Below, piece after piece: positions 12,367 through 32,656 of a DNA stretch of 64,000 nt. The notes under the pieces are model-generated. The model saw nothing but the letters and a program-made list of their open reading frames with translations, was not told where the DNA came from and made no database searches. Within the stretch, counting starts at the first letter, position 1. Every line of letters starts with the position of its first letter. Position numbers and translations under genes: made by a program. The stretch covers positions 1 through 64,000 of IMG/VR virus record IMGVR_UViG_3300042907_001080, one strand, 5' to 3'.

Positions 12367-12397
12367 ACACTAACGGACCTTTAGCAGTATTTATCGA

Positions 12398-15884: not shown

Positions 15885-15937
15885 TTTATTTCCTAATCTA
15901 TAAATTTTAACACAAATTTCGAACCCTGCTAACCTTT

Positions 15938-16621
15938 TTATACCTGCGAATTATAAAAATTTAATAAGTTTACATACTGTTCGTTTTCATGTTTTCTAGA
16001 TCCTTTAGCAGTCCATATCATTCGTTCGGGGGTCATTTTTGTACCGGTCCATTCAGAACTTAATCGAGGTATTGATTTTTCTATCATCATAGCATCTAAT
16101 ATATCTTGATCTAAAAACCAATAAATGTTTCCTTGTTTGAAACTTTCTTGTAATCTAGTGCTATAAGTATTTCTAAAATCATCATCTCCAAACGATATTG
16201 CACTGGCTAACGATTTGCCACCTTTTCTAATAGTAATTTTACTAATGTTAGTTGCCTCTAAAAATTTAATTAATGGAATTGTTTTATTGGCAATCACATC
16301 ACAATCAAAACTTATAATTTTTGCAGCTGGATCAAATATTTCCGGAATTCGTATAAATCGAATGCAGGCACATAGGGTATTAAATTCTTTATCATCAACA
16401 TCTAGTAATTCGTTGGTGTAACTTATATTTTTTTGAGAACACCATTCTAGTTGTTTGTCTGTTGGATTATACAAGTGAACATGAACTTTTGCCCACGGCG
16501 CATGTTGTAGTAAACTTAAGGCCAGTGCTTTACCATATAGATCAAAATATTTTGAATCTGCCGCAAAATAAAAAAAGTTACCCGTTAATCGAGCCGGTAT
16601 ATTCAAAGAAGGAAGAATCAT
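15938..16621 (-). CDS. GT-A-like glycosyltransferase
   Basis: HVHLYNP, CIRF, FDCDVI (DxD), WFLDQ; last gene of sugar operon. Confidence 0.6.
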   Translation of the reverse strand: MILPSLNIPARLTGNFFYFAADSKYFDLYGKALALSLLQHAPWAKVHVHLYNPTDKQLEWCSQKNISYTNELLDVDDKEFNTLCACIRFIRIPEIFDPAAKIISFDCDVIANKTIPLIKFLEATNISKITIRKGGKSLASAISFGDDDFRNTYSTRLQESFKQGNIYWFLDQDILDAMMIEKSIPRLSSEWTGTKMTPERMIWTAKGSRKHENEQYVNLLNFYNSQV

Positions 16622-17433
16622 AGATTTTTTAATTCAATAAGCATTTGATCGTAATCGGAAATATTAAACTCTAATAATTTACGTGTGTCAATTAAGATTT
16701 TGTTTACGGGCTTTGGACCTTGTGTTTGTATAATGGTTTTGTTAAGAGCAAATATATCGTTTATTTTACACAACAAGTCATATTTGTTAATCTTATTATC
16801 ATTGTTAACAAGATGATACACTCCCGTAATTACCGGAGTTTGCATGTATTGATCAATGCATTTTGCCAACTGTAAGGTAGTGATGCCGTTCCACCAAGCA
16901 TTGTTCCATCCTTGCAATTCACTTGCAGAATTATTGACAATCCAATTAAAGAGTCCTGTGCCATTTGATTTTATTTCAGGTCCGATGATACTCATTCTAA
17001 AAGTAACGTCTTTATCGTTGTTAATTTCACCTAGAGATTTCGACTTGCCATACAAGTTAGTTTCGGTGTGTGTATCTAATTCAACATAGTTTCCTTTCTT
17101 GCCATCAAACACACAATCAGTTGATAAGTGAACCACTCGTGTTTTGCTTTTTAAAAAGGTATGTTCTAAAAAGTGTGGAAACCAACCATTGATCAATGCA
17201 GCACGATCCGGACGATCGTTACTATCTTTAACTAACAATCCCACACAATTGATCACAAAGTCAAAAATATTTGTAACTTCACCGAGGCGTTGTATTTCTG
17301 CAAAATTCTCAACATCTATAATAAGATCTGCATTAGATCTTGCCAGTGTGCTTACATCGTGGCCTTGTTGTTTGAGATATCGAGTGATAACATGACCGGC
17401 CATACCGTTACTGCCAACTACTAAGATTTTCAT
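16618..17433 (-). CDS. RmlD-like NAD(P)H sugar 4-reductase (SDR)
   Basis: GSNGMAG, HLSTDCVF, YGKSK (YxxxK). Confidence 0.88.
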   Translation of the reverse strand: MKILVVGSNGMAGHVITRYLKQQGHDVSTLARSNADLIIDVENFAEIQRLGEVTNIFDFVINCVGLLVKDSNDRPDRAALINGWFPHFLEHTFLKSKTRVVHLSTDCVFDGKKGNYVELDTHTETNLYGKSKSLGEINNDKDVTFRMSIIGPEIKSNGTGLFNWIVNNSASELQGWNNAWWNGITTLQLAKCIDQYMQTPVITGVYHLVNNDNKINKYDLLCKINDIFALNKTIIQTQGPKPVNKILIDTRKLLEFNISDYDQMLIELKNL

Positions 17434-18422
17434 ATAAAATTGCCTTTCTTAAGCATTTCTTTAATGGCATTGCGTTGCATAATAAATGTTTTAGAACTAA
17501 ACTCTTCTTCTGAAAACTTCTCTAAGCTGCTATACTTGTCTATTAATGTTTGTTTAGGATTAAATGGTAGTATCACAAAATATGCATCGTCATATTTGTA
17601 TGACATTACTGCTTCGTGTTTTGATATCAGCATCTCATCTAATTTTTCACCGGGTTTACTCCCCATCTCTGTAATTTCTGCATCGCCGTAGACATCTATC
17701 AAAATGTCTGCGATATCTTTGATGTATGCCGCTGGCATATTCATTACAAATGTTTCACCACCTATACTTTCTTCGGCAGCTTTAAATAGTAAACCAATAG
17801 CTTCTTCGAGTGTTAAGAAGAATCGAGTCATTCTTAGATCAGTGATAGTAACCGGTCCACCGTTACGGATCTGTTCTATAAAGTATGGAATAACACTGCC
17901 ATTAGATCCCATAACATTGCCTCCACGTACACAGACAAATCTAGTATGATCGGTTAGATCGTTGGCTTGAATAATCAACTTTTCACCCACAGCTTTAGTC
18001 ATTCCGTATAAGTTCAATGGCTCAACTGCCTTGTCGGTGGATACATCGATGACTTTTTTAACACGATTTTCAATCGCAGCATTAACAACATTTGTTGTAC
18101 CTATTACATTTGTTTTAATAGCTTCCTGAGGTTGATCTTCGCAGATAGGTACGTGTTTAAGAGCAGCCATGTGAAAAATATAATCAACATTCTTAGTAGC
18201 AAACTTAACTGCTTCGTAGTCTCTAACATCTCCTATGATGTATTTGATATTGAGATTTTTAAACTTACGTTGCATTAATACCTGCTGAAGTTCACCTCTT
18301 GAAAAAATAATAATTTCTTTAGGGTTGTGTTTTTCAAGCATTAATCGAGTCAGTGTTTGCCCCCACGAGCCAGTGCCGCCTGTAATTAAAATTCGTGCGT
18401 TGTCAAAAATACTATCATTCAT
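17430..18422 (-). CDS. UDP-GlcNAc 4,6-dehydratase (FnlA/WbjB/CapD/PseB family)
   Basis: ITGGTGSWG, IGDVRD, AALKHVP, STDKA, YGMTKA, GNVMGSNGSVIP, MTRF, PGEKL. Confidence 0.9.
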   Translation of the reverse strand: MNDSIFDNARILITGGTGSWGQTLTRLMLEKHNPKEIIIFSRGELQQVLMQRKFKNLNIKYIIGDVRDYEAVKFATKNVDYIFHMAALKHVPICEDQPQEAIKTNVIGTTNVVNAAIENRVKKVIDVSTDKAVEPLNLYGMTKAVGEKLIIQANDLTDHTRFVCVRGGNVMGSNGSVIPYFIEQIRNGGPVTITDLRMTRFFLTLEEAIGLLFKAAEESIGGETFVMNMPAAYIKDIADILIDVYGDAEITEMGSKPGEKLDEMLISKHEAVMSYKYDDAYFVILPFNPKQTLIDKYSSLEKFSEEEFSSKTFIMQRNAIKEMLKKGNFI

Positions 18423-19173
18423 ATTTTACTCCGATGTCATCTGGGTTGTGGAATAATGCTCTATGTTTGTTATCCAAAGATTCCACTTCCTCTGCAGGTC
18501 TTGTATTTGTATAGTAATACAAAATTAATGATCTACGACTTCTATCTTCGGGGCATTTTAACGGAGTAGGATGACCGTGAAAACTAAAATCGTCAGTTCT
18601 AAATACAACCAGTCTGTTAAGTAATGGACTAATTTTATCAACGCATACTCCTGGTTTGTTGTCGGGGGTTCTAGACCACATTTCTAAATGGCCTCCCCAT
18701 TCTTCTTGCCAATTATCGTTTAAGTATAGGATAACATTTAATCTTCTGTGTACTCCCATTAGATCGTGCCAGTTGCCGTCTGCGTGTACTGCTAGTGTGC
18801 CGCCTGTATTGATCTGGTTAAATCCGCCGCCTGTTAGATAGGGATCAGGAATAAGCCCATTAATTCCAGTTAGCTTAGATAAGAATCTTAAAAATGTTCC
18901 ACCATTTAAAAAATTAATTAAATCCAATGTGTTAGCAGGAACATCACTATCGTCTTTCCAATCACTACGCCATTTAATTTGAATCTTATCGTGATTACGC
19001 TTGTCCCAACTTTCAAAATTTTCATTGTTGAAGTCAGTTAGTGTTTCATTAATAACTTTTTCTGTAAAAAAATCATCTATAGCAATATAGTTAAACGGTT
19101 GCTTAGATTGAAATTCGTTAGAAAGATCTTCTAGATCAAATTTGTCAAATTCTACATATTTCTTTTTCATCAA
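18415..19173 (-). CDS. 2OG-Fe(II) oxygenase (HxD...H type)
   Basis: LAVHADGN, RRLNVILYLN, WGGHLE, SFHG, RRSL. Confidence 0.85.
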   Translation of the reverse strand: MMKKKYVEFDKFDLEDLSNEFQSKQPFNYIAIDDFFTEKVINETLTDFNNENFESWDKRNHDKIQIKWRSDWKDDSDVPANTLDLINFLNGGTFLRFLSKLTGINGLIPDPYLTGGGFNQINTGGTLAVHADGNWHDLMGVHRRLNVILYLNDNWQEEWGGHLEMWSRTPDNKPGVCVDKISPLLNRLVVFRTDDFSFHGHPTPLKCPEDRSRRSLILYYYTNTRPAEEVESLDNKHRALFHNPDDIGVKYE

Positions 19174-19179
19174 TTGTCC

Positions 19180-20253
19180 TTAGTTCGACAGTAGTATGTT
19201 AACAACTACGTCTGATACATTATTTTGATTGTACTCTTCAGGTATTTTCCAGTTCCTGTCAGCTGACTTCATTCTGTTAAAGCAGGCAACAATATTTTCT
19301 TTATCCAAGCCGCTAATTACGTTAGAGCCGCACCAAACTGTTTCTGGTCTTTCTGTTGTATCTCTAATGGTAATTGTTGGTATACCGAATAAACACATTT
19401 CTTCTTGAACCGTTCCTGAATCGCTAATTGCCATATGTGCATTTTTTTCTAAGTTGACAAAATCAAAAAACCCCAAAGGTTCCGTTATTATAATGTTTGG
19501 ATTATCAACTAAAATATTAAACTTTGCTAATTTTTGTTTGGTTCTAGGATGACAACTAAACACTATCTTATATTCTTTAGATATTTCTTCAAAACTTTCA
19601 AAAATATTAATCAACCGATCGTTAACATCAACATTTTCTGCTCGATGCGCTGTGGCTATAATGTAGTTATTTTTTTCAAGATTAAGTGCTGATAATATAG
19701 GAGAACTGTCTATTTCATTTGCATAAAAATCTATTACTTCTTTAATTGGATTCCCCGTGACAAATACTTTGTTGTTTGCAGCACCTTCACGCAATAAATT
19801 TTGACGGCTTAACTCAGTATAAGGTAAATTTATACTAGACACGGCATCAATAATTTTTCTATTCTTTTCTTCAGGAACTTTAAGATCATAACAACGATTG
19901 CCAGCTTCCATATGATAGACCGGAATGCCTAATCTTTCACATATAATTGCTGCTAGGCCTGAATTGGTGTCGCCCAATATCAAAACTTTATCAGGCTTAA
20001 ATTCGTTTACAAATTTTTCAACACCTACAAATGTATTACCAATTTGTTCTGCAAAGGATACAGATTTATTGTCAATTACATAATCTGGGTTTCTTAAACT
20101 CAATTCTTTGAAGAATACATCATTTAAATTTTTATCATAATTTTGACCGGTATGCAATATTTTATGATCAACAATGTTATCAAGTTTAGGAATAATTCTA
20201 GATAGTCTTATAATCTCAGGTCTTGTTCCTAAAATTGTTAGAACCTTAGTCAT
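19180..20253 (-). CDS. UDP-HexNAc 2-epimerase, non-hydrolysing (FnlC/WbjD/Cap5G-like)
   Basis: GTRPEIIR, HTGQNYD, LGDTNS, HMEAGNRCYD..PEEKNR, SDSGTVQEE, TERPE. Confidence 0.9.
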   Translation of the reverse strand: MTKVLTILGTRPEIIRLSRIIPKLDNIVDHKILHTGQNYDKNLNDVFFKELSLRNPDYVIDNKSVSFAEQIGNTFVGVEKFVNEFKPDKVLILGDTNSGLAAIICERLGIPVYHMEAGNRCYDLKVPEEKNRKIIDAVSSINLPYTELSRQNLLREGAANNKVFVTGNPIKEVIDFYANEIDSSPILSALNLEKNNYIIATAHRAENVDVNDRLINIFESFEEISKEYKIVFSCHPRTKQKLAKFNILVDNPNIIITEPLGFFDFVNLEKNAHMAISDSGTVQEEMCLFGIPTITIRDTTERPETVWCGSNVISGLDKENIVACFNRMKSADRNWKIPEEYNQNNVSDVVVNILLSN

Positions 20254-20779
20254 TTGGAAATACCCCAACAAAATAATGGCAAAGACTAGGTAAGTCTAAT
20301 GGTGTCCAGTCTGTAAAATCTTCTTTATGCCAAAGACTTTTATGTATGTCAAAAGTATTACCATAGCACCATAATCTTGGATCATTTACATTTTTATGAT
20401 TATCATCCCAAATTTCTTCTAACGGAGTCAATAATACAATTTTTTTAGTGGTAAGAGTTTTCACAGAATCTAAAAGACGAATGCCTGCATCTTTATCAAG
20501 GTGTTCGATAAAATCTATCATTAAAACATAATCAAATTTCTCACCGCCTAATAAGGTGTTTAGATCAACAGTTTCTAGGTCTGCTACAAAATCTGGATTC
20601 ACTGACTCCCATGCATCAATTGTGATAATTTTGCTACATCTGTCTTTAAATGGATCTGAATATAATTTCGGACCGCATCCGAGATCTAAAATAGAATCTC
20701 CTTCTTTAACAACGGAGTGTAGATATCTCATTAGCTCGTCGTTCGATGAAGCTCGTTTTCCGTTTATATTGTGTTTCAT
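20246..20779 (-). CDS. class I SAM-dependent methyltransferase
   Basis: ILDLGCG, FDYVLMIDFIEHL. Confidence 0.85.
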   Translation of the reverse strand: MKHNINGKRASSNDELMRYLHSVVKEGDSILDLGCGPKLYSDPFKDRCSKIITIDAWESVNPDFVADLETVDLNTLLGGEKFDYVLMIDFIEHLDKDAGIRLLDSVKTLTTKKIVLLTPLEEIWDDNHKNVNDPRLWCYGNTFDIHKSLWHKEDFTDWTPLDLPSLCHYFVGVFPND

Positions 20780-21546
20780 TTAATATTGTCCTTATTATTA
20801 GCTCTAATAGTGGGGGGAACAGATGCTTGCAATTTGGCAAGTAATTGTTGATTATTAACAGTTGCTGGCGGCGCCAGCGGGTTATTATACATTTTAGGGT
20901 GCCATTGATGTATAACATACGGTGCTTCAACAAACGTTACATTTAATTTTTTATTTTTAATTCTTTGTAAAAATTCGTCGTCATCATAACTATGACCGAA
21001 AGCAAATTCTTCGTCAAAACCATTTAATTCACACAAGTTCTTCCTAGTAATTGCCGAGGTATAGTGATATCCCACTGGATGGTGAACACTATGATTAACC
21101 CATTTTGTTTTACTAGATTTTGTTCCGCCTACATCTATTGTACCGCCTTGATGTAGAATTCTTACATCGCCTTTGTTACATGCCCAGCAATGAAAGGTTA
21201 GATAATTGTCATCAGTTAATGTTTGATTCACATATGAGATTACATCGCCTTGATGACAGCACTCTGGATTTTGAATAATAATTTTGTCACCAGAACTTTC
21301 ACGGAATCCAACATTATACGGCACACAGGGATTAAACCAAGTCTTAGATCCTCGATCTGACATTTTAATTATTTTAATATTCAGCGACGGAAATTCACTA
21401 GGAACAGTATCTAAACTGTTTTCTAAATTGCTAAAATCATCTACAATTATTACTTCAAAGTCTTTTTCCCGACTTTGAATAAATGTTTTTAGAGTATGTC
21501 TTAATAATTCTAATCGATTATAATATGCCATTACTATTGATATCAT
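20776..21546 (-). CDS. GT2 family glycosyltransferase
   Basis: ISIVMAYYNR, IIVDDFS, YNVG, GFDEEF..G..YDDDEF, HQWH. Confidence 0.88.
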   Translation of the reverse strand: MISIVMAYYNRLELLRHTLKTFIQSREKDFEVIIVDDFSNLENSLDTVPSEFPSLNIKIIKMSDRGSKTWFNPCVPYNVGFRESSGDKIIIQNPECCHQGDVISYVNQTLTDDNYLTFHCWACNKGDVRILHQGGTIDVGGTKSSKTKWVNHSVHHPVGYHYTSAITRKNLCELNGFDEEFAFGHSYDDDEFLQRIKNKKLNVTFVEAPYVIHQWHPKMYNNPLAPPATVNNQQLLAKLQASVPPTIRANNKDNIK

Positions 21547-22142
21547 GATAGTTTTACCTCAGCCATTATATATTTGTTTCGTTGATTAATCACATTAACA
21601 ATTTCTACGCCGTCTTCTTGCTCGGGCATATTAGTCTTTTTGTATATCACTCGCAAATCCATTATAATTCTCGTATTTGCATGTGAATGTTTTAATATCA
21701 AATCTTTATAAGTGTTTACAGGATAGTGAAAACCACAAGACACCCACGACGTAATCAAATCAAATTTAACATCTTCTGGAATATTAATATTATTGCAATC
21801 AATTAAATGATATTTTTTAGTGCCTAATTTTTTTAATTCTGCGTCTACCTCTGACAATGGATGATAGAATAAGAAATCGTTAGCTGTCTTATTATATTTT
21901 CCAGTTGATGCTTCGGGAGATTTAGAGTCGTTATCTTTAGTATCGCCGTCTAACAACCACAGCTCGGAATTATATTTTTCATTGAACATTCTCGATTCCC
22001 AAGCAAGCCCGCAGCCAATATCTAAAATCTTCATTGGTGCGCTGCCTAAGAATTTATCTAGAATTTCAAAATTTTCTTTCTTGTGGCTTTGATATAATTC
22101 TGTTTCCCAGAGCCCGCCACTGCCTAACCACTGTTTTGTCAT
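21543..22142 (-). CDS. class I SAM-dependent methyltransferase
   Basis: ILDIGCGLA, KFDLITSWVSCGFHYP. Confidence 0.75.
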   Translation of the reverse strand: MTKQWLGSGGLWETELYQSHKKENFEILDKFLGSAPMKILDIGCGLAWESRMFNEKYNSELWLLDGDTKDNDSKSPEASTGKYNKTANDFLFYHPLSEVDAELKKLGTKKYHLIDCNNINIPEDVKFDLITSWVSCGFHYPVNTYKDLILKHSHANTRIIMDLRVIYKKTNMPEQEDGVEIVNVINQRNKYIMAEVKLS

Positions 22143-22483
22143 TTTGAATACCCCACAGTTTCACGCTCAATGTCATCGTGATCAAATTCTGCCCAATATA
22201 ATTCAAATGCTACACAGTCTGTGACTGCTTCAAATTGATGATATTCGCCCGGAGCAACCTTTGTATATTCGCCTGCCTTTAACAAAGTTTCGTCTACGAG
22301 ATCATAATTGCCTTTCCATACACGAATAATCATTTCACCGGACTCGACAAAGAATCCATTCCACTTGTATTTGTGTTTATGCTTAGAACATACTCCACCG
22401 GCGTTGGCTTCAATACGATGAAATTCTAATACACCGTTGGCTTCTAACAATTCTGTCTGTCCCCATACTTTTCCTGCTTTCAT
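22139..22483 (-). CDS. cupin (phosphomannose-isomerase-like / sugar epimerase)
   Basis: KVWG, CSKHKH, FFVESG, PGEYHQF; SD AAGGAG. Confidence 0.8.
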   Translation of the reverse strand: MKAGKVWGQTELLEANGVLEFHRIEANAGGVCSKHKHKYKWNGFFVESGEMIIRVWKGNYDLVDETLLKAGEYTKVAPGEYHQFEAVTDCVAFELYWAEFDHDDIERETVGYSK

Positions 22484-22502
22484 GCTATCTCCTTAATGTG
22501 TG

Positions 22503-22508
22503 TATTTA
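22503..22508 (-). promoter_or_regulatory. late-type promoter heading the 22483-15938 sugar operon
   Basis: TAAATA on minus strand, 19 nt upstream of cupin ATG with SD in between. Confidence 0.55.
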
Positions 22509-22509
22509 A

Positions 22510-23016
22510 TCAGATCAATTTATGTAATTGCAAAACTTCGCTTTGTCTTGAAACTTCTTTGACAAAGAACACGCAAGGTGGATTGACCTCCTCGCTGAGC
22601 GGCACAGTTAATAATTGTCCGTTTTTCATCTTAGGAAAATACCAACGCACATCCTGATAGATATTAACAATTTCTATAGGCATATATTCTGCTCTAAAGC
22701 CTTTGATCGGATTAAACACTAGTGCGTCAAATCCACGCTCATTGATACTAGTCAACGGTAACACTTCGGGATCAAGCCCACAATCTTTGTCACCTACTAC
22801 CATGCACCAATCCAAAGGCATTTGCACTTCATAGCCTCCTATGTTCAGCACTATAGCCGGTGAATTAAACGATTCTAAAAATATCAAAGGCATGAAATAA
22901 AAATCTGGATCCTGTGGATTTGAATTATCCAGCACCGAAAATCTTGTATCTTCGTCTACTTGATCCGGCAATTCGTTTAGATCAAATGCTTCATTGTTTA
23001 GTGTGAGTATTCTCAT
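22510..23016 (-). CDS. hypothetical beta-rich protein, possibly degenerate Hint-like fold
   Basis: IVLNIGGYEVQMPLDWCMVV pattern resembles intein block B without the TxxH residues; weak. Confidence 0.6.
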   Translation of the reverse strand: MRILTLNNEAFDLNELPDQVDEDTRFSVLDNSNPQDPDFYFMPLIFLESFNSPAIVLNIGGYEVQMPLDWCMVVGDKDCGLDPEVLPLTSINERGFDALVFNPIKGFRAEYMPIEIVNIYQDVRWYFPKMKNGQLLTVPLSEEVNPPCVFFVKEVSRQSEVLQLHKLI

Positions 23017-23654
23017 TTTAATTTTCCTAGTATTACGTTTCGGTGATCAGCATCCCATGCTAAAATGTCATAGTTAAAATTGATCTTACAGAAATCAATT
23101 GCTCTAGTATCACTGTTTTCTTGTTCTACAACCAACAGAGGATTGTATTTTTTAATGGTGTTAACTGCACCTTGTAAAACATTTAATTCGTATCCGTCTA
23201 CATCAATTTTAATATAATCAATATCTGAAAAATTAAATTCATCTATAGTGTATAGCTGTTCATCATACCACTTTTCTTGCGGTACTTTTCCAGCAGTTAT
23301 ACTTCCACCACCGCTTACCTTTATAATTTTATGTTCTTCACCCAACGCACATTTAAAATGTGTAATTTTAGATAGGTCAACATTTTTATGAAATAATTTT
23401 CTTCTTCGATAATCAAAACAAAAAACATGATTAAAATCTTTGTGAAGATATCTTGTATATTCGCCGTCTCTACAACCAACATCTATAGCATTTCTTTTTT
23501 CTGTAATAAAAGGAAGACTAGCTACCCACGTTTTTTTACAATGGTGATTAGGGAATTCTTGTGTGCCATCTGGGCTAAAGAAAAAATCAGTATCGTAAAA
23601 ATCCCAGTTAAATGTGTTTTCAGAAAACTGAGTAGGTTCAAGAGGATGTATCAT
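23013..23654 (-). CDS. FkbM-family methyltransferase
   Basis: AIDVGCRDG, CALG, IDYIKIDVDGYELNVLQGA. Confidence 0.85.
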   Translation of the reverse strand: MIHPLEPTQFSENTFNWDFYDTDFFFSPDGTQEFPNHHCKKTWVASLPFITEKRNAIDVGCRDGEYTRYLHKDFNHVFCFDYRRRKLFHKNVDLSKITHFKCALGEEHKIIKVSGGGSITAGKVPQEKWYDEQLYTIDEFNFSDIDYIKIDVDGYELNVLQGAVNTIKKYNPLLVVEQENSDTRAIDFCKINFNYDILAWDADHRNVILGKLK

Positions 23655-26276: not shown

Positions 26277-26282
26277 TATTCA

Positions 26283-26311
26283 AGTATACAGCCTTGATTT
26301 CTGGTTGTCAA
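26283..26311 (-). promoter_or_regulatory. sigma70-type promoter, 6 nt from ATG
   Basis: TTGACA-17 nt-TATACT-TGAATA-ATG. Confidence 0.85.
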
Positions 26312-27182: not shown

Positions 27183-27581
27183 ATGAATAAGATTAAAAAA
27201 AGACTGAGTAAATTGTCAAAAAACGCAGACAATGCGTTGGTAATTGGTGCCGCATTTGGTCAATTAGAACAACTGTTAGACTTATATTCAACAATTTTTG
27301 TTGTGAACGAAGACAACACAGAACTAAAAGCAAAAAATCTCATTTATAGACAAAGCATTGACAGATTAGATAGCATTGTAAATGTCAGGGCAGTATTTTT
27401 TGACATCAAACACATCTCTAAATTAGAAAGTCTGCAAACATTTTGGAAGAAAAATAATTCGTTGATATTCATTGAAGGCGGCGACGCTTTGCCTAGGGAT
27501 CTATCAACGCCGTTATACGATTCAGGGTGGCGATGCACCAGTCTCCAAGGAGCATTTCACGTATGGGAAAAACAACAATGA
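27183..27581 (+). CDS. hypothetical protein, possibly degenerate methyltransferase fold
   Basis: ALVIGAAFG near N-terminus; coupled to downstream GT. Confidence 0.65.
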   Translation: MNKIKKRLSKLSKNADNALVIGAAFGQLEQLLDLYSTIFVVNEDNTELKAKNLIYRQSIDRLDSIVNVRAVFFDIKHISKLESLQTFWKKNNSLIFIEGGDALPRDLSTPLYDSGWRCTSLQGAFHVWEKQQ

Positions 27582-28411
27582 AAATAGCAGTAGTAACAAC
27601 CTTTCACGAAGACGGACTTAACAAATATGCACAGCGTATGATCAACACCTTCTGCGAGAACTGGCCTACTGAGGTCATACTTCATTTATATCCCGAAAAG
27701 TGCAACCCTGCGATCCGTGATCACAGTCGTGTCACACTGAAACGTCTAGAAGAAGTTGCAGAACTAATGACTTTTAAAAACACATGGAAAGATGTGCCTA
27801 AGGCCAACGGCGATGTGTCGGCGGATCCTGTGAGATCTCTAAGAAAAGATTCAGGCAAAGGATTCAAATGGCATGCTGTGAGATTTGCACATAAAGTTTA
27901 TGCCATATTTGATTGTGTCAAAGAAACAGATGCGGATATTTTAATATGGATGGATGCAGATACTATTTGCCACAGTCCTATCACCATGACCGATCTATAC
28001 AAGATGATTCCCACTGATAGTGAGCTGTGCTATCTGGGTCGAAGGGGCAAATATTCAGAGTGTGGTTTGTATGCAATGAATCTACGATCGCCTAACATTC
28101 AACTTTTTCTCAAAGAATTTCAAAGAGTCTATGATCAAGCCGAACAAGGAATTTTTCAGTTAGCTGAGTGGCATGACAGTTTTGTGTTTGATGCGGTACG
28201 AGTAAAATTTCCGCAGATGCGACAACTAGATTGGGCAGCACACTTGCATGACCTACGTCCAGCACCAGGAATGACGTCGGGCGAAGGACACCCATTAATT
28301 AATAGCCAATGGGGCGCATGGCTGGATCACCTCAAGGGTGGTAGAAAGAAATTAGGTCGTAGTAAACCTGAAGATCTAAAAGTTCAAAGAACAGAAGCGT
28401 ATTGGCGTTAG
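27578..28411 (+). CDS. GT-A glycosyltransferase
   Basis: FAHKVYA, IWMDADT (DxD), WHDSFVFD, DHLKG; start at ATG 27578. Confidence 0.75.
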   Translation: MKIAVVTTFHEDGLNKYAQRMINTFCENWPTEVILHLYPEKCNPAIRDHSRVTLKRLEEVAELMTFKNTWKDVPKANGDVSADPVRSLRKDSGKGFKWHAVRFAHKVYAIFDCVKETDADILIWMDADTICHSPITMTDLYKMIPTDSELCYLGRRGKYSECGLYAMNLRSPNIQLFLKEFQRVYDQAEQGIFQLAEWHDSFVFDAVRVKFPQMRQLDWAAHLHDLRPAPGMTSGEGHPLINSQWGAWLDHLKGGRKKLGRSKPEDLKVQRTEAYWR

Positions 28412-29334
28412 AGATACTGTTTGAAAAATTGCCAAGCTTCTCCGGATCGAAGTTCATTAAAATTCCAATGGCACATAGATATCTGTTCAATCCATGATTT
28501 TCTCTCGGGCATCTCGGGATTTTCTAATCGACTTAAATCTGTATTCGCTACTTGGTAACTTTGACTACGCTGTGGATTATGATCTGTAAGAAATGCCGGA
28601 ACTCCTTCAATAATACTAGCCACGCTTGGACTACTGTTGTATACTACTGTGGCCCATGCACCTCTTAAATCGTCGACTAATCTTTCATTAACACTTAATC
28701 GTACACCTTTGCCGTAAATTTTTAAAATTGATTTAATTTTTTTATCTCCGGGGTGTGTTCGAACAACAATCTGACGTTTTCTACTATGCTGTCTAATTTG
28801 TGCAATAGTTTGATCTAACCATGTCTGAACATCTAGCCCACCCATGCTCCACCCACCGTGTCGCTGTAGGCAAATCAATATGTGCTCTCCCTGTGTTCTC
28901 CAAGGCTGCAAACTTATGCGTAAATCGTGACTAATTTTTTGCCAACGTCCAGGATCGATATCTCGATCAAAGTAAAATCCAGTAGTAGGAAAAACTCCAT
29001 CAAAACTGTATCTCAGATAGGTTTTGGTATTATTCGGATCAGCATATAAAAACAAATTGCTGTCTACGATTAAACTTCTCCGATTGTTTTCTTTCTGCAA
29101 TGCAACGGCATCTTGTCTCAATTGAAGATGAGGAGCCGATTTACCATGTTCGTGAACAAACCCCTGTATCAATGCTACATCACAAGGCACAGCATTCATC
29201 CCAGTGTGTGCAATGGCATGATCCCCGGACGATTTCACTCCCTGCAAAAAATTATCCAAGATCAAAGGTTTTTCTGGATTCTTGTTTGTAGGCGGGATTC
29301 CACCATAATAGGCCACAGCGGTGATGTTAGACAC
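28408..29334 (-). CDS. GT-B KpsS/KpsC-like paralogue 2
   Basis: RTHPGD, VVYNSSPSVASIIEGVP, CHWNFNELRSG. Confidence 0.6.
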   Translation of the reverse strand: MSNITAVAYYGGIPPTNKNPEKPLILDNFLQGVKSSGDHAIAHTGMNAVPCDVALIQGFVHEHGKSAPHLQLRQDAVALQKENNRRSLIVDSNLFLYADPNNTKTYLRYSFDGVFPTTGFYFDRDIDPGRWQKISHDLRISLQPWRTQGEHILICLQRHGGWSMGGLDVQTWLDQTIAQIRQHSRKRQIVVRTHPGDKKIKSILKIYGKGVRLSVNERLVDDLRGAWATVVYNSSPSVASIIEGVPAFLTDHNPQRSQSYQVANTDLSRLENPEMPERKSWIEQISMCHWNFNELRSGEAWQFFKQYL

Positions 29335-30421
29335 TGTGATATTCCTTTACTATATTGTATGCAGTTCCGTCCATGAGTTCATTGTAGGTAAACTGACAAT
29401 AACTAAGCCATGCTAGCCAATCGCCAAGCGGGCCATAATATAAATCATTGATCTGTGCTAGATTATTTCTAGTAACAGAGTTACTAACATGTTTGTCAAG
29501 AGTGATAGCAGGAATGCCTGCCCAGATAGATTCCACAGCACTGTTTGAATTGATACTAACCGTGCAATAGTAGTCTCCATCTAGCAGTGTTTGATAAAGA
29601 CTAGTGCGTGTTTTCTTATTAGTTTTAGATCTAATTTCTATAGGTCTATCTGTGTGTTTTTTCAGTTCATCGACGATTTGTTTGGTCCAAGATTCCACAT
29701 CTACATGCATGATGCTGGCTGCAAACTCGCCGGGCTCTACCACTAATATTTTTTTGCCAGTGTTACGCCAAGGTCTAGGAAATTCTGTGAAATTTTTCAA
29801 TCTATCTGCAGGTGCAACAAATTGATTATTAAAATGCAGGTGATTTCTTGTAAGCCTATGCCATTTTTTATTAGATTCAACAAAATTAGTATACCCGCTA
29901 TCTATGAACCAGAACGGAAGATGATTATCAATTTTATCTACAATGATATTTTCATTGCCTACTGTGTTTCGTAATAGACAGTCTTCTGCGCTGTTCAAGA
30001 AATCTCTGCGACGAATCATAGTTGCTGTGGGATCAATTTGTAGTCCAACGGTTTTGATAAAATATTGTTGATCACTATTCATATAGGCGTCAATGATATT
30101 TTCAGCACCTAATTTTTCTATCACGTATTCAGCCTTTTTGTGTATTTGGCCGAAATAATTTTTTCTGTAATTTTCTAAAACTGTGTTGACTTTACTGCGC
30201 CATTCTATAGCATCCGCAGAGACTCCCCGCCATAGTTTTTCTTTAAACTTATCACGGAATTTTTCAATATCAAATTTATGATGATCTCTTTTTTCGATGA
30301 TAAAGTGTATAGCTTCTGCAGTTTTACGCTCATCTAACTCAATGTGTGCGCAATGATCTTTTAAATCTATCAGACTGATAAGATAGTGTGCAAGTTCTTT
30401 GTCGTTTACTAGTAATTTCAT
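29327..30421 (-). CDS. GT-B KpsS/KpsC-like paralogue 3
   Basis: FIDSGY, VSINSNSAVESIWAGIP, CQFTYNELMDG. Confidence 0.6.
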   Translation of the reverse strand: MKLLVNDKELAHYLISLIDLKDHCAHIELDERKTAEAIHFIIEKRDHHKFDIEKFRDKFKEKLWRGVSADAIEWRSKVNTVLENYRKNYFGQIHKKAEYVIEKLGAENIIDAYMNSDQQYFIKTVGLQIDPTATMIRRRDFLNSAEDCLLRNTVGNENIIVDKIDNHLPFWFIDSGYTNFVESNKKWHRLTRNHLHFNNQFVAPADRLKNFTEFPRPWRNTGKKILVVEPGEFAASIMHVDVESWTKQIVDELKKHTDRPIEIRSKTNKKTRTSLYQTLLDGDYYCTVSINSNSAVESIWAGIPAITLDKHVSNSVTRNNLAQINDLYYGPLGDWLAWLSYCQFTYNELMDGTAYNIVKEYHSV

Positions 30422-31188
30422 TGATTTAATATTTTCCAGGCTGTACCGTTGGTAATTTCTTCTTGGGTGAACTGGCCATACGCCAAGGTCTTACACATTT
30501 CGGTTATATTTTCTGTCGAAGGTTTGAATGGATTTCCGAGTGTGGATAGATCGGTAGATGCCAGAGTGCTGGCTGCGCAAGGCACCGAAACAAATGCCGG
30601 GATGCCGTATAGCACACTTTCCAATGATGCTATGCTGTTGAATGACACCGTGGCGTAAACTCCAGAATTAAATGCGTCGTAAATTGAATATCCATGTCCC
30701 CTTTCACTTCTTGATCCTTTCGCCCTGATTTCAATCGGCAAATTAGAATATGTTTTTATTTTTTCAGTAGTTTCTTTAATCCATGTATCACAATCAATAT
30801 CAAAATATCTACAGGCTTTGGGATTCGGCAATACCAATAATATCTTTTTATTAAAAGGTTTCCAGCCTTTCCAACTCAATCTAGGATCTTGGTTAAGAAG
30901 ATTGATCCATCGATCGGCGGGAACTGATTGAGGGGTAATATGTTGTAGATCATTTTTTACAATTCGGTGCCACCATTTTTTACCTGACTTGTTTCCTACA
31001 CTTGGAAAATTACCTACATAACCAGTATCTATGTAATAAAAATCTCTGTTCGTCTTTTTGCACTCTACTATTTCGCTTTTGCTTGTTACCCCACGAACAA
31101 CCATAGGGTTATCAATGTTGGACATATCCGTAGTACAAAAATGATTCGACCCTACGACCAGAGATTCTTCTAAAGATAGTTCTTTCAT
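30418..31188 (-). CDS. GT-B KpsS/KpsC-like paralogue 4
   Basis: YIDTGY, VSFNSIASLESVLYGIP, GQFTQEEITNG. Confidence 0.6.
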   Translation of the reverse strand: MKELSLEESLVVGSNHFCTTDMSNIDNPMVVRGVTSKSEIVECKKTNRDFYYIDTGYVGNFPSVGNKSGKKWWHRIVKNDLQHITPQSVPADRWINLLNQDPRLSWKGWKPFNKKILLVLPNPKACRYFDIDCDTWIKETTEKIKTYSNLPIEIRAKGSRSERGHGYSIYDAFNSGVYATVSFNSIASLESVLYGIPAFVSVPCAASTLASTDLSTLGNPFKPSTENITEMCKTLAYGQFTQEEITNGTAWKILNQ

Positions 31189-31979
31189 AATGTTAATAAC
31201 ATCTCCATGGCTTTGCCGTTTCTCAATTCTGAATTATGAAACTGCCCGTATGACAAATGACAGGCCCACGCATATAATTTATCTTGGTCGGGATAGTAAG
31301 GTTCGTTTATTTTAGATAGATCCTGCAAACTAACAGGACTAGCTGCATTAGCCGGTGCTAGAGTAAATGCAGGTATTCCAAGGAATACAGCTTCTGTAGC
31401 TGCTACACTGTTGAATGTAACTAATGCAAATACATCATCATTGAGGGCCTGTTCTAGTGTATCGTTAACTGTTCTATCTAATCTTTTAGGTGCCCGCTCT
31501 CTAACTACCACAGGTCTATCTGTGTATTTTTTTATTTCATTTACTGTATGTTCTAACCAAATATCTAGATTGTAGTCATAGAATCGCATGGGTTTTTCAT
31601 CTGGTTTCGCTACTAGTATCTTTCTTCCATCTTTCTTCCAGGGCTGAAACTTTTTATTAAAATGTTTAAATCTATCATCTTTTCTTGGCACGATCTCGCC
31701 ATGTTGTAGATTGTTCTTTACTATACGATGCCAATTTTTCCAACCATTGGGATTTGAATCAGTTCTCTCATTGCCAAAATATCCCGTGTCTATATAATAG
31801 AAATCACGACTATCTTCCCAACATTGGTGTATCCACTTTTTCTTAAGTATACCTCTTAATACAATAGGATCAATACTGTCGTTGTAATTAAAATCTTCAG
31901 TTGAAGTTGTTCTAGTGTTGCACCCCTGTGCAAACATGTTAATATATGGATCTTTGCCGTCTTTGCTTAAAAAGATCAT
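31185..31979 (-). CDS. GT-B KpsS/KpsC-like paralogue 5
   Basis: YIDTGY, VTFNSVAATEAVFLGIP, GQFHNSELRNG; start at ATG 31979 (ATGA overlap). Confidence 0.6.
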   Translation of the reverse strand: MIFLSKDGKDPYINMFAQGCNTRTTSTEDFNYNDSIDPIVLRGILKKKWIHQCWEDSRDFYYIDTGYFGNERTDSNPNGWKNWHRIVKNNLQHGEIVPRKDDRFKHFNKKFQPWKKDGRKILVAKPDEKPMRFYDYNLDIWLEHTVNEIKKYTDRPVVVRERAPKRLDRTVNDTLEQALNDDVFALVTFNSVAATEAVFLGIPAFTLAPANAASPVSLQDLSKINEPYYPDQDKLYAWACHLSYGQFHNSELRNGKAMEMLLTL

Positions 31980-32656
31980 AGACCGTGCTGTAGACAATAA
32001 TCTACGTAAATTTTTTCTCTATGCCATTCGTTGGAGAAATCACCCTGGTCTGAAAATTCATGGAAGCAAGGTGTTCCTAGGGTATAGTGAACTAATTTTG
32101 CTTGAGGGTTCCACTCGTATTCAATATCCAGCCAGTTCCATTCTACTGGAAGTTCGCCGACTAAGTCGTCAGTAAGCCATGTAAATCTATGTACCTGTGC
32201 TCCAGTGGCATTTTGTATAAACTCCGGAGTAACCACAGCATTGGCAGGGTGCCCACAGTTCCAAAGTATCACACTAGACCAATTTTTACAAGGATAGTCT
32301 TCGTTCTTGGCACCAAGATACTTTTCAGACATTTTAGTTTTGTAGTCGTGTTTAACAACCATAACTGCTTTTGAATTATCTCTTAATGCCCATAGTTTTT
32401 CAATGTCGTCACGCAATAACATATCGCCGTCCATGAATATTGCCCAACCTTTATATTGCATTAAGTGTGGAACAAGGAAGCGACTGTAGATAAAATGATT
32501 ACTACCGTCGGTGTGTTTTTCTTCGTAGTCTTTTAATATGTTCAATGCCAACGGGTTAATACTCACTGGATGACTAGAATGTCTAATAATACTGTTTGAA
32601 CACACATGGTATGCTATGGCTTCTCGGGGATCATACCCAATAAAAATTGGAATCAT
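31976..32656 (-). CDS. GT8-like glycosyltransferase
   Basis: IFIGYDPRE, FIYSRFLVP, FMDGDML, KNWSSVILWN, WNWL, LVHYTLGTP; start at ATG 32656. Confidence 0.8.
   Translation of the reverse strand: MIPIFIGYDPREAIAYHVCSNSIIRHSSHPVSINPLALNILKDYEEKHTDGSNHFIYSRFLVPHLMQYKGWAIFMDGDMLLRDDIEKLWALRDNSKAVMVVKHDYKTKMSEKYLGAKNEDYPCKNWSSVILWNCGHPANAVVTPEFIQNATGAQVHRFTWLTDDLVGELPVEWNWLDIEYEWNPQAKLVHYTLGTPCFHEFSDQGDFSNEWHREKIYVDYCLQHGL

What the first reader, a model, noticed from the sequence alone, without database searches (positions are those of the whole stretch)
15938..22483. Complete phage-encoded 6-deoxy-L-HexNAc (likely UDP-L-RhaNAc/L-QuiNAc) pathway with tailoring enzymes
Seen: FnlA/WbjB-like dehydratase, RmlD-like reductase and FnlC/WbjD-like 2-epimerase (HMEAGNRCYD) in one coupled operon with a GT2, a second GT-A, two methyltransferases, a cupin and a 2OG oxygenase. 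Known: dehydratase + WbjC + WbjD gives UDP-L-FucNAc (Pseudomonas O11, S. aureus Cap5E-G); with an RmlD-like reductase (Vibrio cholerae O37 WbvB/WbvR/WbvD) the products are UDP-L-RhaNAc then L-QuiNAc, and Megavirus chilensis uses a similar trio. Inference: the phage makes an O-antigen-type rare sugar and may methylate or hydroxylate it.
Basis: partly seen in the sequence, partly recalled or inferred. Interest (0 to 1): 0.65.

Follow-up and report, generated by a model that had tools for sequence, protein, structure and literature searches.

The report
Lake jumbo phage rare-sugar glycosylation operon
A large freshwater bacteriophage carries a tightly packed operon that most likely turns UDP-GlcNAc into the rare sugars L-RhaNAc and L-QuiNAc and attaches and methylates them, as giant viruses and some bacteria do; what gets glycosylated is unknown.

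Summary
Nine coupled minus-strand genes at 15938-22483 encode a cupin, two methyltransferases, a GT2, a 2-epimerase, a 2OG oxygenase, a UDP-GlcNAc 4,6-dehydratase, an RmlD-like reductase and a second GT-A, now shown by fold to be GT8-like. The window is the start of a 282-kb lake-water jumbo myovirus.

- **Dehydratase.** It is neither FnlA/CapE-type nor PseB. It keeps the Tyr-x3-Lys motif and falls in its own well-supported, almost wholly viral clade.
- **Reductase.** It belongs to the 270-aa S-T-D-C family. In about 75 of 80 bacterial loci this family sits beside a dehydratase and a 2-epimerase.
- **Epimerase.** It clusters with CapG-type enzymes, far from WecB.
- **Pseudaminic acid.** No aminotransferase or synthase for that route is present.

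The best analogue is Megavirus Mg534/535/536, which makes UDP-L-RhaNAc and UDP-L-QuiNAc. In related lake phages the dehydratase-reductase pair is constant, while the epimerase, glycosyltransferases and methyltransferases are swapped as cassettes. The oxygenase is one of seven protein-hydroxylase-like paralogues, so it is probably not a sugar tailoring enzyme.

The product stereochemistry and the acceptor (virion protein, host envelope or DNA) remain inferred. I rate it a new member of a known kind, of moderate interest.

The parts
17430..18422 (-). UDP-GlcNAc 4,6-dehydratase (330 aa) of the short soluble Polysacc_synt_2 type, presumed also to be a 5-epimerase. It has the T-D-K and Y-x3-K ('LYGMTK') motifs and belongs to a clade that is almost wholly viral.
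   Evidence: Pfam E 2.5e-96. PseB HMM 327 bits (cut-off 407.75) and FnlA HMM 258 bits (cut-off 730). PDB alignments to 4j2o, 2gn4, 3vvb and 4tqg. Motif census. Maximum-likelihood tree.
16618..17433 (-). RmlD-like NAD(P)H 4-ketoreductase (271 aa) of the family inferred to include WbvR and Mg535. It is presumed to be a 3-epimerase/4-reductase giving UDP-L-RhaNAc.
   Evidence: Pfam RmlD_sub_bind E 5e-22. The S/T-T-D-C-V-F motif is in 116 of 118 relatives. It is linked to a dehydratase and a 2-epimerase in about 75 of 80 bacterial loci. Tree.
19180..20271 (-). Non-hydrolysing UDP-HexNAc 2-epimerase of the CapG/WbvD/FnlC type. It is presumed to interconvert UDP-L-RhaNAc and UDP-L-QuiNAc. The likely start is the ATG at 20253.
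   Evidence: Pfam E 9e-93. Best PDB match is CapG 7ya2 at 299 bits, against 145 bits for E. coli WecB. Against the wecB HMM it scores 292 bits, like the trio-linked bacterial enzymes (231-249) and unlike a housekeeping Vibrio WecB (526). Tree.
20776..21546 (-). GT2-family (inverting GT-A) glycosyltransferase, 256 aa, with no predicted membrane segment. It is the candidate transferase for the phage-made sugar.
   Evidence: Pfam GT2 E 8e-9 and Glyco_transf_7C E 4e-6. PDB chondroitin synthase domain E 2e-7. Homologues occur only in relatives that also carry the 2-epimerase. No TM segment.
15938..16621 (-). GT8-like (retaining GT-A) glycosyltransferase, 227 aa, the last gene of the operon.
   Evidence: AlphaFold pLDDT 94. 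Foldseek matches glycogenin, UGGT and GlyE at E 1e-9. D22, D106 and D108 are invariant. Atlas neighbours are viral GT8/Nucleotid_trans clusters. No Pfam or PHROG hit.
20246..20779 (-). Class I SAM methyltransferase, 177 aa, a candidate sugar O-methyltransferase.
   Evidence: Methyltransf_23 E 2e-6. The nearest PDB match is an O-methyltransferase (UbiG type) at E 8e-5.
21543..22142 (-). Probable class I SAM methyltransferase, 199 aa, with weak support.
   Evidence: Methyltransf_23 E 0.005, below the cut-off. SAM motif I 'ILDIGCG' is present. Conserved at 75-92% in L094 and L102.
22139..22483 (-). Small metal-binding cupin, 114 aa, the first gene of the coupled run. Its role is unknown; it may be a sugar epimerase or isomerase.
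   Evidence: Cupin_2 E 2e-6 and WbuC subfamily 20 bits against a cut-off of 42. HxH...E...H ligands are present. It belongs to a large family of small phage cupins. It also occurs in relatives that lack the 2-epimerase.
18415..19170 (-). 2OG-Fe(II) oxygenase, 251 aa, of the prolyl-hydroxylase-like kind with an intact HxD...H triad. It is probably a protein hydroxylase or a passenger gene rather than a sugar-tailoring enzyme.
   Evidence: 2OG-FeII_Oxy_3 E 2e-16. The nearest PDB matches are OGFOD1, Tpa1 and P4H. It is one of seven paralogues in the genome. Within the island it is found only in this phage and in L094/L095.
23013..23654 (-). FkbM-family methyltransferase, 213 aa, just upstream.
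   Evidence: Methyltransf_21 E 8e-11. It has no counterpart in L094 or L102.
27527..33414 (.). Second glyco block between the UvsW-like helicase and UvsX. It holds a GT2-like gene (27527-28411, + strand), four genes of unknown function, a GT8 (31976-32737, - strand) and a cytidylyltransferase-like/mannose-6-P-isomerase-cupin fusion (32653-33414, - strand).
   Evidence: Pfam. The same genes lie next to the dehydratase-reductase pair in relatives L005-L007.

Best explanation
The operon is a phage-encoded glycosylation module built around a UDP-6-deoxy-L-HexNAc pathway of the Megavirus Mg534/535/536 and Vibrio cholerae O37 WbvB/R/D kind.

Proposed steps:
1. The Tyr-type short dehydratase converts host UDP-D-GlcNAc to the UDP-4-keto-6-deoxy-L sugar by 4,6-dehydration and C5 inversion.
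2. The 271-aa S-T-D-C reductase epimerises C3 and reduces C4, giving UDP-L-RhaNAc.
3. The CapG-type 2-epimerase equilibrates this with UDP-L-QuiNAc.
4. The soluble GT2 (inverting) and GT8-like (retaining) transferases add these and probably a common sugar to an acceptor in the cytoplasm.
5. Up to three SAM methyltransferases O-methylate the glycan.

Shown here: gene content, family and clade membership, gene linkage, and conservation of the dehydratase-reductase pair across a lineage of lake phages with cassette-like exchange of the accessory genes.

Inferred: every catalytic step, the L-manno/L-gluco stereochemistry, and the acceptor. I consider virion proteins the most likely acceptor, host lipo-oligosaccharide core next, and DNA least likely.
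For: Core enzymes:
- Domain hits for all three are very strong.
- The reductase has the S/T-T-D-C-V-F motif, found in 116 of 118 relatives, where true RmlD has STDYVF.
- In about 75 of 80 bacterial loci this reductase lies next to a Polysacc_synt_2 dehydratase and a 2-epimerase. This is the arrangement described for wbvB/R/D and for Rickettsia pso (PMC6765297).
- Protein sizes of 330, 271 and 363 aa match Mg534/535/536 at 323, 270 and 370 aa. Mg534 also has Y-x3-K (PMC9614988; PDB 4TQG hit E 6e-46).
- The epimerase is closest to CapG. It is separated from a housekeeping WecB by a long branch with 100% SH-aLRT support.

Exclusions:
- No DegT/PseC aminotransferase and no NeuB/PseI synthase is in the 282-kb record.
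- No ThyA-family, TET/JBP or C5-methyltransferase gene was found.

Organisation:
- All cluster proteins lack predicted membrane segments, and no Wzx- or Wzy-sized membrane protein is in the genome.
- The genes are translationally coupled.
- In 33 IMG/VR contigs the dehydratase-reductase pair is always adjacent, with changing sets of GT2, GT25, GT32 and GT8 transferases and methyltransferases.

Precedent: Megavirus fibrils carry L-RhaNAc, 4-O-methyl-L-RhaNAc and L-QuiNAc (PMC9614988).
Against: - No enzyme of the phage clades has been assayed.
- The dehydratase clade is distinct from every characterised enzyme (PseB, CapE/FnlA, Mg534). Inversion at C5 is therefore inferred only from its partners.
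- If the reductase does not epimerise C3, the product would be 6-deoxy-L-AltNAc or 6-deoxy-L-IdoNAc rather than L-RhaNAc.
- I could not place the sequences of WbvR or Mg535 themselves in my trees. The giant-virus metagenome homologues are only 33-36% identical and form a separate clade.
- The cupin's role is unexplained.
- Nothing in the sequence identifies the acceptor.
- The record is about 80% complete, so the absences are provisional.
Confidence: 0.7

Rival explanations
1. The enzymes are the same but the stereochemistry differs. The Tyr-type dehydratase inverts only C5 and the reductase only reduces C4. The pair then makes UDP-6-deoxy-L-AltNAc or UDP-6-deoxy-L-IdoNAc, and with the 2-epimerase their C2 epimers. 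Alternatively the small cupin supplies the C3 epimerisation, as the cupin domain of CapF is proposed to do, which would change the outcome.
For: The dehydratase keeps the PseB-like Tyr and lies outside the FnlA/CapE clade that partners this reductase family in bacteria. The cupin has the metal ligands and a faint WbuC resemblance. CapF combines C3 epimerisation with C4 reduction in a protein that has SDR and cupin domains (PMC3699295).
Against: Mg534 (Tyr-type) with Mg535 (RmlD-like, 270 aa) gives UDP-L-RhaNAc without a cupin (PMC9614988). Most phage relatives carry the pair without any cupin. The Cys of the S-T-D-C motif sits at the position that I align, from memory and without a test here, with the epimerisation Cys of GDP-fucose synthase. 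It is conserved across the whole family.
Confidence: 0.15
2. The module is an auxiliary gene set that remodels the host envelope during infection, for example by adding sugars to the lipo-oligosaccharide core or the capsule. This could block superinfection or adsorption of progeny to debris. It would not decorate the virion.
For: The GT2, GT8 and GT25 families found in these islands include peripheral lipo-oligosaccharide core transferases that need no membrane segment (general knowledge; Pfam names). L-QuiNAc and L-RhaNAc are classic O-antigen sugars (PMC6765297, PMC7685785).
Against: No initiating transferase, flippase, polymerase or ligase is encoded, and no Wzx- or Wzy-sized membrane protein is in the record. 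The island is hypervariable among phages that share conserved flanks, which fits a phage-borne trait at least as well. This rival shares the pathway assignment and differs only in the acceptor.
Confidence: 0.25
3. The glycosyltransferases hypermodify phage DNA, using the rare sugar to glycosylate a hydroxylated base as protection from restriction. Arabinosyl-5-hydroxycytosine in phages RB69 and DLP3, and glucosyl-hmC in T4, are the precedents.
For: The island lies in the replication module, between a UvsW-like helicase and DNA polymerase-related genes and near UvsX and gp32. Phage clusters that combine nucleotide-sugar synthesis with glycosyltransferases for DNA are known (PMC13326640).
Against: No thymidylate-synthase-family hydroxylase or hydroxymethylase, no TET/JBP and no C5 cytosine methyltransferase was found in the 282-kb record. 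The local 2OG oxygenase resembles protein prolyl hydroxylases, not TET/JBP. The TET/JBP search rang in no control genome, so that negative is weak.
Confidence: 0.07
4. The dehydratase is a PseB working in a pseudaminic-acid or related nonulosonate route, and the epimerase is a plain WecB.
For: The PseB HMM scores higher than the FnlA HMM (327 against 258 bits) and the catalytic Tyr is PseB-like. The epimerase passes the wecB equivalog cut-off (292 bits against 210).
Against: Both dehydratase scores are below their cut-offs. The phage clade is separate from a PseB clade with 100/100 support. No PseC-type aminotransferase or PseI/NeuB synthase is present. The dehydratase is always fused in an operon to the S-T-D-C reductase. 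The epimerase clusters with CapG and the trio-linked enzymes, away from WecB.
Confidence: 0.03

Closest known systems
Megavirus chilensis Mg534/Mg535/Mg536 cluster (UDP-L-RhaNAc and UDP-L-QuiNAc for fibril glycans)
   Same: Both are viral. Both have the same three-enzyme logic and nearly the same protein sizes (323/270/370 aa against 330/271/363 aa). Both combine a Tyr-x3-Lys dehydratase with an RmlD-like reductase that carries the conserved Cys. Both have neighbouring glycosyltransferases, and methylated RhaNAc is found in the Megavirus glycan (PMC9614988, PMC10117803).
   Different: The host is a bacterium rather than an amoeba. The phage dehydratase matches Mg534 (4TQG) at only 160 bits, and the giant-virus homologues form separate clades in the dehydratase and reductase trees, so the acquisition was independent. 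The methyltransferases are inside the phage operon, whereas the Megavirus methyltransferase has not been identified.
Vibrio cholerae O37 WbvB/WbvR/WbvD and the homologous bacterial trios (Rickettsia pso, Proteus)
   Same: The same reductase family and the same epimerase superclade, with the three genes adjacent. About 75 of 80 bacterial loci found with the phage reductase show this arrangement.
   Different: The bacterial dehydratases are Met-x3-Lys (82 of 83) and score 550-640 bits on the FnlA HMM. The phage enzyme is Tyr-x3-Lys and scores 258 bits. The best cellular reductase is only 41% identical. The phage has no Wzx/Wzy machinery.
Staphylococcus aureus CapE/CapF/CapG and Pseudomonas WbjB/C/D, E. 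coli FnlA/B/C (UDP-L-FucNAc)
   Same: The same starting substrate, the same dehydratase superfamily, and CapG is the best solved-structure match of the phage epimerase.
   Different: The reductase is not the two-domain SDR-cupin type of CapF/WbjC (about 370 aa). The dehydratase lacks the Met motif of the CapE family (PMC3699295). The expected product is therefore RhaNAc/QuiNAc rather than PneNAc/FucNAc.
Phage glycan islands and virion glycosylation (mycobacteriophage capsid and tail glycosylation; envelope-sugar gene islands of T4-like cyanophages)
   Same: These are phage-borne soluble glycosyltransferases, methyltransferases, cupins and multiple 2OG oxygenases in variable islands. This comparison rests on general knowledge; papers citing mycobacteriophage virion glycosylation were listed.
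   Different: Here the phage also makes its own rare nucleotide sugar from UDP-GlcNAc, with a dehydratase clade not found in the cellular genomes searched.

Membership tests
UDP-6-deoxy-L-HexNAc pathway of the WbvB/R/D and Mg534/535/536 type | Three adjacent genes: a short Polysacc_synt_2 dehydratase, a roughly 270-aa RmlD-like reductase and a non-hydrolysing 2-epimerase | tested here: met
   The same linkage is seen in about 75 of 80 bacterial loci and in phage contigs L102, L112, L115 and L116.
UDP-6-deoxy-L-HexNAc pathway of the WbvB/R/D and Mg534/535/536 type | Reductase belongs to the S/T-T-D-C-V-F subfamily with Y-x3-K, distinct from dTDP-rhamnose RmlD (STDYVF) | tested here: met
   The rmlD equivalog HMM gives only 76 bits against a cut-off of 224.
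UDP-6-deoxy-L-HexNAc pathway of the WbvB/R/D and Mg534/535/536 type | Products are UDP-L-RhaNAc and UDP-L-QuiNAc | not testable with these tools
   This needs an enzyme assay with NMR or MS.
FnlA/WbjB/CapE dehydratases (NCBIfam TIGR04130) | HMM score at or above the curated cut-off of 730 bits | tested here: not met
   258 bits.
FnlA/WbjB/CapE dehydratases (NCBIfam TIGR04130) | Met-x3-Lys in place of the SDR Tyr-x3-Lys | tested here: not met
   The query has LYGMTK, whereas CapE and A. baumannii FnlA have AMGISK (PMC3699295). All 32 phage relatives have Tyr.
FnlA/WbjB/CapE dehydratases (NCBIfam TIGR04130) | Placement inside the CapE/FnlA clade | tested here: not met
   The Met-type clade (96/94 support) excludes the phage clade (99/94 support).
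PseB (NCBIfam TIGR03589) | HMM score at or above the cut-off of 407.75 bits, and placement in the PseB clade | tested here: not met
   327 bits. The PseB clade (100/100 support) excludes it.
PseB (NCBIfam TIGR03589) | Partner genes of the pseudaminic acid route (PseC aminotransferase, PseI synthase) | tested here: not met
   No PF01041 or PF03102 match in the 282-kb record. The record is about 80% complete.
WbjC/CapF/FnlB reductases | Two-domain protein (SDR plus C-terminal cupin) of about 370 aa | tested here: not met
   The reductase is 271 aa with no cupin domain. The separate 114-aa cupin scores 20 bits against the WbuC cut-off of 42.
CapG/WbjD/WbvD-type 2-epimerases (as opposed to housekeeping WecB) | Clusters with CapG and the trio-linked enzymes, apart from WecB | tested here: met
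   CapG 299 bits against WecB 145 bits. wecB HMM 292 bits, against 231-249 for trio-linked enzymes and 526 for a housekeeping WecB. Tree. That tree used the quick method and a single WecB outgroup.
GT8 / GT-A retaining glycosyltransferases (ORF 15938-16621) | GT-A Rossmann-like fold with a DxD motif | tested here: met
   pLDDT 94 model. Foldseek matches glycogenin, UGGT and GlyE at E 1e-9 and TM up to 0.69. D106 and D108 are invariant.
GT8 / GT-A retaining glycosyltransferases (ORF 15938-16621) | Match to the Pfam Glyco_transf_8 profile | tested here: not met
   No Pfam hit at E 0.01. None of its 64 homologues carries a precomputed Pfam domain.
Phage DNA glycosyl-hypermodification systems | An enzyme that makes a hydroxylated or hydroxymethylated base (ThyA homologue, or C5 methyltransferase plus TET/JBP) | tested here: not met
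   The TET/JBP model rang in no control genome, so that part is weak.

The most novel reading that the evidence does not exclude
A widespread lineage of freshwater jumbo phages glycosylates its own virion proteins autonomously, as Mimiviridae do. It would use phage-made, O-methylated L-RhaNAc/L-QuiNAc glycans. The island would diversify by cassette exchange, like a bacterial O-antigen locus, giving phage 'glycotypes' that alter adsorption, stability or recognition by hosts and grazers. The embedded prolyl-hydroxylase-like oxygenase might even create the acceptor hydroxyl groups.
Probability: 0.3. Interest if true: 0.8.

Novelty: new member of a known kind. Interest (0 to 1): 0.5.

Why it matters
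Until now, a complete route to L-RhaNAc/L-QuiNAc encoded by a virus has been described, as far as I could find, only for giant viruses of amoebae. Finding the same logic in bacteriophages has three consequences.

- It shows that rare-sugar autonomy is not limited to giant viruses. The pathway here has an almost wholly viral dehydratase clade. The reductase has more than 3,000 metagenomic relatives, and the closest of them (60-100% identical) are viral or metagenomic. The phage itself recurs in at least 24 lake-water data sets.
- It gives a defined, easily expressed three-enzyme set for testing how Tyr-type and Met-type dehydratases pair with this reductase family.
- The cassette-like variation of transferases and methyltransferases around a fixed sugar-making core is a natural experiment in glycan diversification. 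It could explain part of phage-host specificity in lakes.

If the acceptor is the virion, this would be the first phage known to build its coat glycan from a nucleotide sugar of its own making.

Tried and rejected
- **DNA similarity.** Megablast of the operon against 50,697 phage records found nothing, so no isolate-level relative could be used.
- **Promoters and terminators.** The consensus scan was uninformative: 58 promoter-like sites against 43.5 expected, and no convincing terminator in the operon.
- **Fold of ORF 15938-16621.** Single-sequence AlphaFold failed (pLDDT 40). It was repeated with an alignment.
- **Cupin.** PDB sequence search gave only one insignificant hit.
- **Methyltransferase and GT2.** PDB searches gave only generic matches.
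- **Context look-ups.** Two look-ups by translated locus coordinates found no exact product on record. I called ORFs myself instead.
- **FnlA references.** None of 155 genomes searched for FnlA had a hit that reached the 730-bit cut-off in six-frame search. S. aureus CapE, taken from an unverified 'phage' record that evidently carries the host cap locus, served as the characterised Met-type reference.
- **Collagen-like acceptors** for the hydroxylase: none found.
- **Pseudaminic acid route and DNA hypermodification** were considered and disfavoured.
- **Not run.** The large representative-protein search (cost, and family identity was not in doubt), read laying, and complex prediction (no specific pair to claim).

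Full report
**1. What is there**

The window is the first 64 kb of an IMG/VR virus record of 281,658 bp, estimated about 80% complete. It encodes a large terminase, a 1,184-aa tail sheath, a tail tube, baseplate proteins, UvsX, a gp32-like SSB and a DnaB-like helicase. Its terminase is 54% identical to that of Pseudomonas jumbo phage PA5oct. The operon's sampled 31-mers are all held by at least 24 lake-water metagenome runs from 24 studies. It is therefore a recurrent freshwater jumbo myovirus, and 'phage-encoded' is correct.

On the minus strand, nine ORFs run from 22483 down to 15938. They overlap by 4-8 nt or are separated by at most about 9 nt. Pfam and NCBIfam identify eight of them: a cupin, a weak methyltransferase, a GT2, a methyltransferase, a 2-epimerase (E 9e-93), a 2OG-Fe(II) oxygenase, a Polysacc_synt_2 dehydratase (E 2.5e-96) and an RmlD-like reductase (E 5e-22).

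The ninth ORF (15938-16621) has no profile hit. A 37-sequence alignment gave an AlphaFold model with pLDDT 94. Its best structural matches are glycogenin, the UGGT catalytic domain and GlyE, with E about 1e-9 and TM up to 0.69. The N-terminal Asp and the DxD motif are invariant.

**2. The dehydratase**

Neither description fits.

- It scores 327 bits on the PseB model (cut-off 407.75) and 258 bits on the FnlA model (cut-off 730).
- In alignments to solved structures it has T-D-K and L-Y-G-M-T-K. This is the Tyr-x3-Lys of PseB/FlaA1 and Mg534, not the Met-x3-Lys that defines CapE/FnlA (PMC3699295).
- All 32 dehydratases from related viral contigs have Tyr. Of 83 dehydratases found next to the homologous reductase in bacteria, 82 have Met.
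- A careful maximum-likelihood tree (66 sequences, LG+C20+F+G4, rooted on CapD/PglF-type enzymes) gives four separate groups. These are PseB (100/100), the Met-type CapE/FnlA/bacterial-trio clade (96/94), giant-virus homologues, and a phage clade that also holds one Prolixibacteraceae sequence (99/94). The order among the four is unresolved.
- In 301 Bacteroidota genomes the best identity was 49%, split between PseB-like and FnlA-like hits.

**3. The reductase**

It is only distantly RmlD-like: 76 bits on the rmlD model against a cut-off of 224, and a best PDB E-value of 1e-12. A word search found 3,131 relatives. Everything above about 60% identity is viral or metagenomic. The best hit in 185,579 species genomes is 41%.

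The family is marked by S/T-T-D-C-V-F where RmlD has STDYVF, in 116 of 118 sequences. The Cys sits two residues after the catalytic Thr. From memory, this is the position of the epimerisation Cys of GDP-fucose synthase. The giant-virus review says that Cys is conserved in Mg535 (PMC9614988). I did not align Mg535 itself.

In about 75 of 80 bacterial loci recovered with this reductase, a dehydratase (42-52% identical) and a 2-epimerase (40-53%) lie beside it. This is the trio arrangement described for V. cholerae wbvB/R/D, Rickettsia pso and Proteus, which makes UDP-L-QuiNAc (PMC6765297). In the reductase tree the phage sequences form one clade nested with nine bacterial ones (97), and the giant-virus sequences lie apart.

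**4. The epimerase**

- Its best solved-structure match is S. aureus CapG at 299 bits. E. coli WecB scores 145 bits.
- On the wecB model it scores 292 bits. The bacterial trio-linked enzymes score 231-249, and a housekeeping Vibrio WecB scores 526.
- In a quick tree the phage epimerases form a clade beside the CapG/trio group. A very long branch with 100% SH-aLRT support separates them from WecB.

The second refutation condition is therefore not met either. No PseC-type aminotransferase and no PseI/NeuB synthase is present in the record.

**5. Most likely chemistry**

The closest functional analogue is Megavirus chilensis.

| Enzyme | Size | Role (PMC9614988, PMC10117803) |
|---|---|---|
| Mg534 | 323 aa, Y-x3-K | 4,6-dehydratase/5-epimerase |
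| Mg535 | 270 aa | 3-epimerase/4-reductase, giving UDP-L-RhaNAc |
| Mg536 | 370 aa | 2-epimerase, giving UDP-L-QuiNAc |

Megavirus fibrils carry RhaNAc, 4-O-methyl-RhaNAc and QuiNAc. The phage proteins are 330, 271 and 363 aa, with the same motif pattern. I therefore propose the route UDP-GlcNAc, then UDP-4-keto-6-deoxy-L-IdoNAc, then UDP-L-RhaNAc, in equilibrium with UDP-L-QuiNAc.

This is inference. The main chemical alternative arises if C3 is not epimerised, or if the cupin does that step. The product would then be a 6-deoxy-L-AltNAc or 6-deoxy-L-IdoNAc series.

**6. Context and evolution**

In 33 IMG/VR contigs and several assemblies the dehydratase and reductase are always adjacent and coupled. 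The other genes vary.

| Gene | Where it is found |
|---|---|
| 2-epimerase | This phage, L094/95, L102, L112, L115 and L116 |
| GT2 of this operon | Only where the epimerase is present. L115 and L116 instead have a GT2-GT32 fusion whose GT2 part is 24-25% identical |
| Cupin | This phage, L094/95, L102, L107-111 |
| 2OG oxygenase | This phage and L094/95 only |
| FkbM methyltransferase (close homologue) | This phage only; L107-L111 carry a 30%-identical counterpart |

Other relatives carry GT25, GT7C, GT32 and different methyltransferases in these positions.

DNA comparison shows conserved flanks (helicase, phrog_11279, phrog_11058, a polymerase-related gene) at 68-82% identity, with whole genes swapped inside the island. 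Identity is also mosaic: against L094 the dehydratase is 97% identical, the oxygenase 95%, the reductase 83%, the epimerase 75% and the GT2 58%.

A second glyco block (GT2-like, GT8, a cytidylyltransferase-like/cupin fusion and four genes of unknown function) lies at 27.5-33.4 kb. In some relatives it directly abuts the dehydratase-reductase pair. The unit is thus a fixed sugar-making core inside a diversifying glycosylation island.

**7. The oxygenase and the tailoring claim**

The oxygenase has an intact HxD...H triad. Its nearest solved relatives are protein prolyl hydroxylases (OGFOD1, Tpa1, P4H), at weak E-values. It is one of seven highly diverged paralogues in the genome. A sugar-hydroxylating role is therefore not supported.

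It may be a passenger gene or a protein hydroxylase. No collagen-like protein was found. A second SDR gene overlapping another such oxygenase lies at about 233-235 kb of the record, and this repeated pairing is unexplained.

Methylation is plausible. Two class I SAM methyltransferases are in the operon, one of them weakly supported, and an FkbM-family enzyme lies just upstream.

**8. The acceptor**

- None of the cluster proteins has a predicted membrane segment. The record has no Wzx- or Wzy-sized membrane protein and no initiating transferase. This points to cytoplasmic glycosylation.
- No ThyA-family, TET/JBP or C5-methyltransferase gene was found, which argues against DNA glycosylation.
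- Virion proteins (as in giant viruses and mycobacteriophages) and host lipo-oligosaccharide core (which uses peripheral GT8 and GT25 enzymes) both remain possible. I rank virion proteins first, on the hypervariability of the island, but this is a judgement.

**9. Verdict**

The finding is a new, bacteriophage member of a known kind of pathway. Its dehydratase clade is almost wholly viral, and it has an interesting cassette architecture. I rate the interest as moderate, 0.5.

I did not use read laying, complex prediction or the large representative-protein search.

Noticed in passing
window 3797-4558 (+): A six-TM protein of the Bax inhibitor-1 family (PF01027, E 6e-53) is encoded by the phage. 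This is an unusual membrane protein for a phage, possibly affecting host membrane or ion homeostasis or the timing of lysis.
   Followed up: no
window 18415-19170, 55299-55826, 55823-56509, 57813-58367, 62657-63286; G000:C1 ~194.4 kb and ~234.6 kb: There are seven highly diverged prolyl-hydroxylase-like 2OG-Fe(II) oxygenase paralogues in one phage genome. The two compared share only 32% identity over 63 residues. The one at 62657-63286 is followed by a DUF6445 protein (63288-63956).
   Followed up: partly
L002 (G000:C1:232016-235228): 686-1420, 1417-2343, 2327-2959: A cold-shock-domain/glutathione-peroxidase fusion (244 aa) is followed by a second sugar-nucleotide SDR (308 aa, GDP-mannose-dehydratase/epimerase-like). 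That SDR overlaps another 2OG oxygenase (210 aa). This is a second SDR-oxygenase pairing in the same genome.
   Followed up: partly
window 27527-33414: A second block of glycan genes: GT2-like, four genes of unknown function (256-364 aa), a GT8, and a cytidylyltransferase-like/mannose-6-P-isomerase-cupin fusion. It is conserved in relatives, where it can abut the dehydratase-reductase pair.
   Followed up: partly
window 12000-27000 compared with L094, L102, L107, L100: Whole genes are replaced as cassettes between conserved flanks, and identity is mosaic within the operon (dehydratase 97%, reductase 83% and GT2 58% against L094). This indicates frequent recombination among co-occurring lake phages.
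   Followed up: yes
window 13514-14128 (-): A 204-aa ORF matches a PHROG annotated as DNA polymerase (phrog_11778, E 1e-64). It aligns to only part of a long polymerase profile, which suggests a split or fragmentary polymerase gene in this lineage.
   Followed up: no
window 46228-49782 (-): The tail sheath protein is 1,184 aa, much longer than typical sheaths. Only its C-terminal part (residues 893-1182) matches the common sheath PHROG (phrog_23).
   Followed up: no
L121 (GenBank OR849864.1, 'Staphylococcus phage SA 1298 Kay', UNVERIFIED_ORG): This unannotated 'phage' record carries what look like the S. aureus capD-capE-capG capsule genes. It is therefore probably host DNA rather than phage sequence.
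   Followed up: partly
L082 (Prolixibacteraceae MAG, CAXXKQ010000011.1): This is the only cellular dehydratase found that has Tyr-x3-Lys and groups with the phage clade (52% identity by tblastn). It sits next to a reductase homologue with no 2-epimerase nearby. It may be a prophage or viral fragment, or a hint to the source or the host.
   Followed up: no
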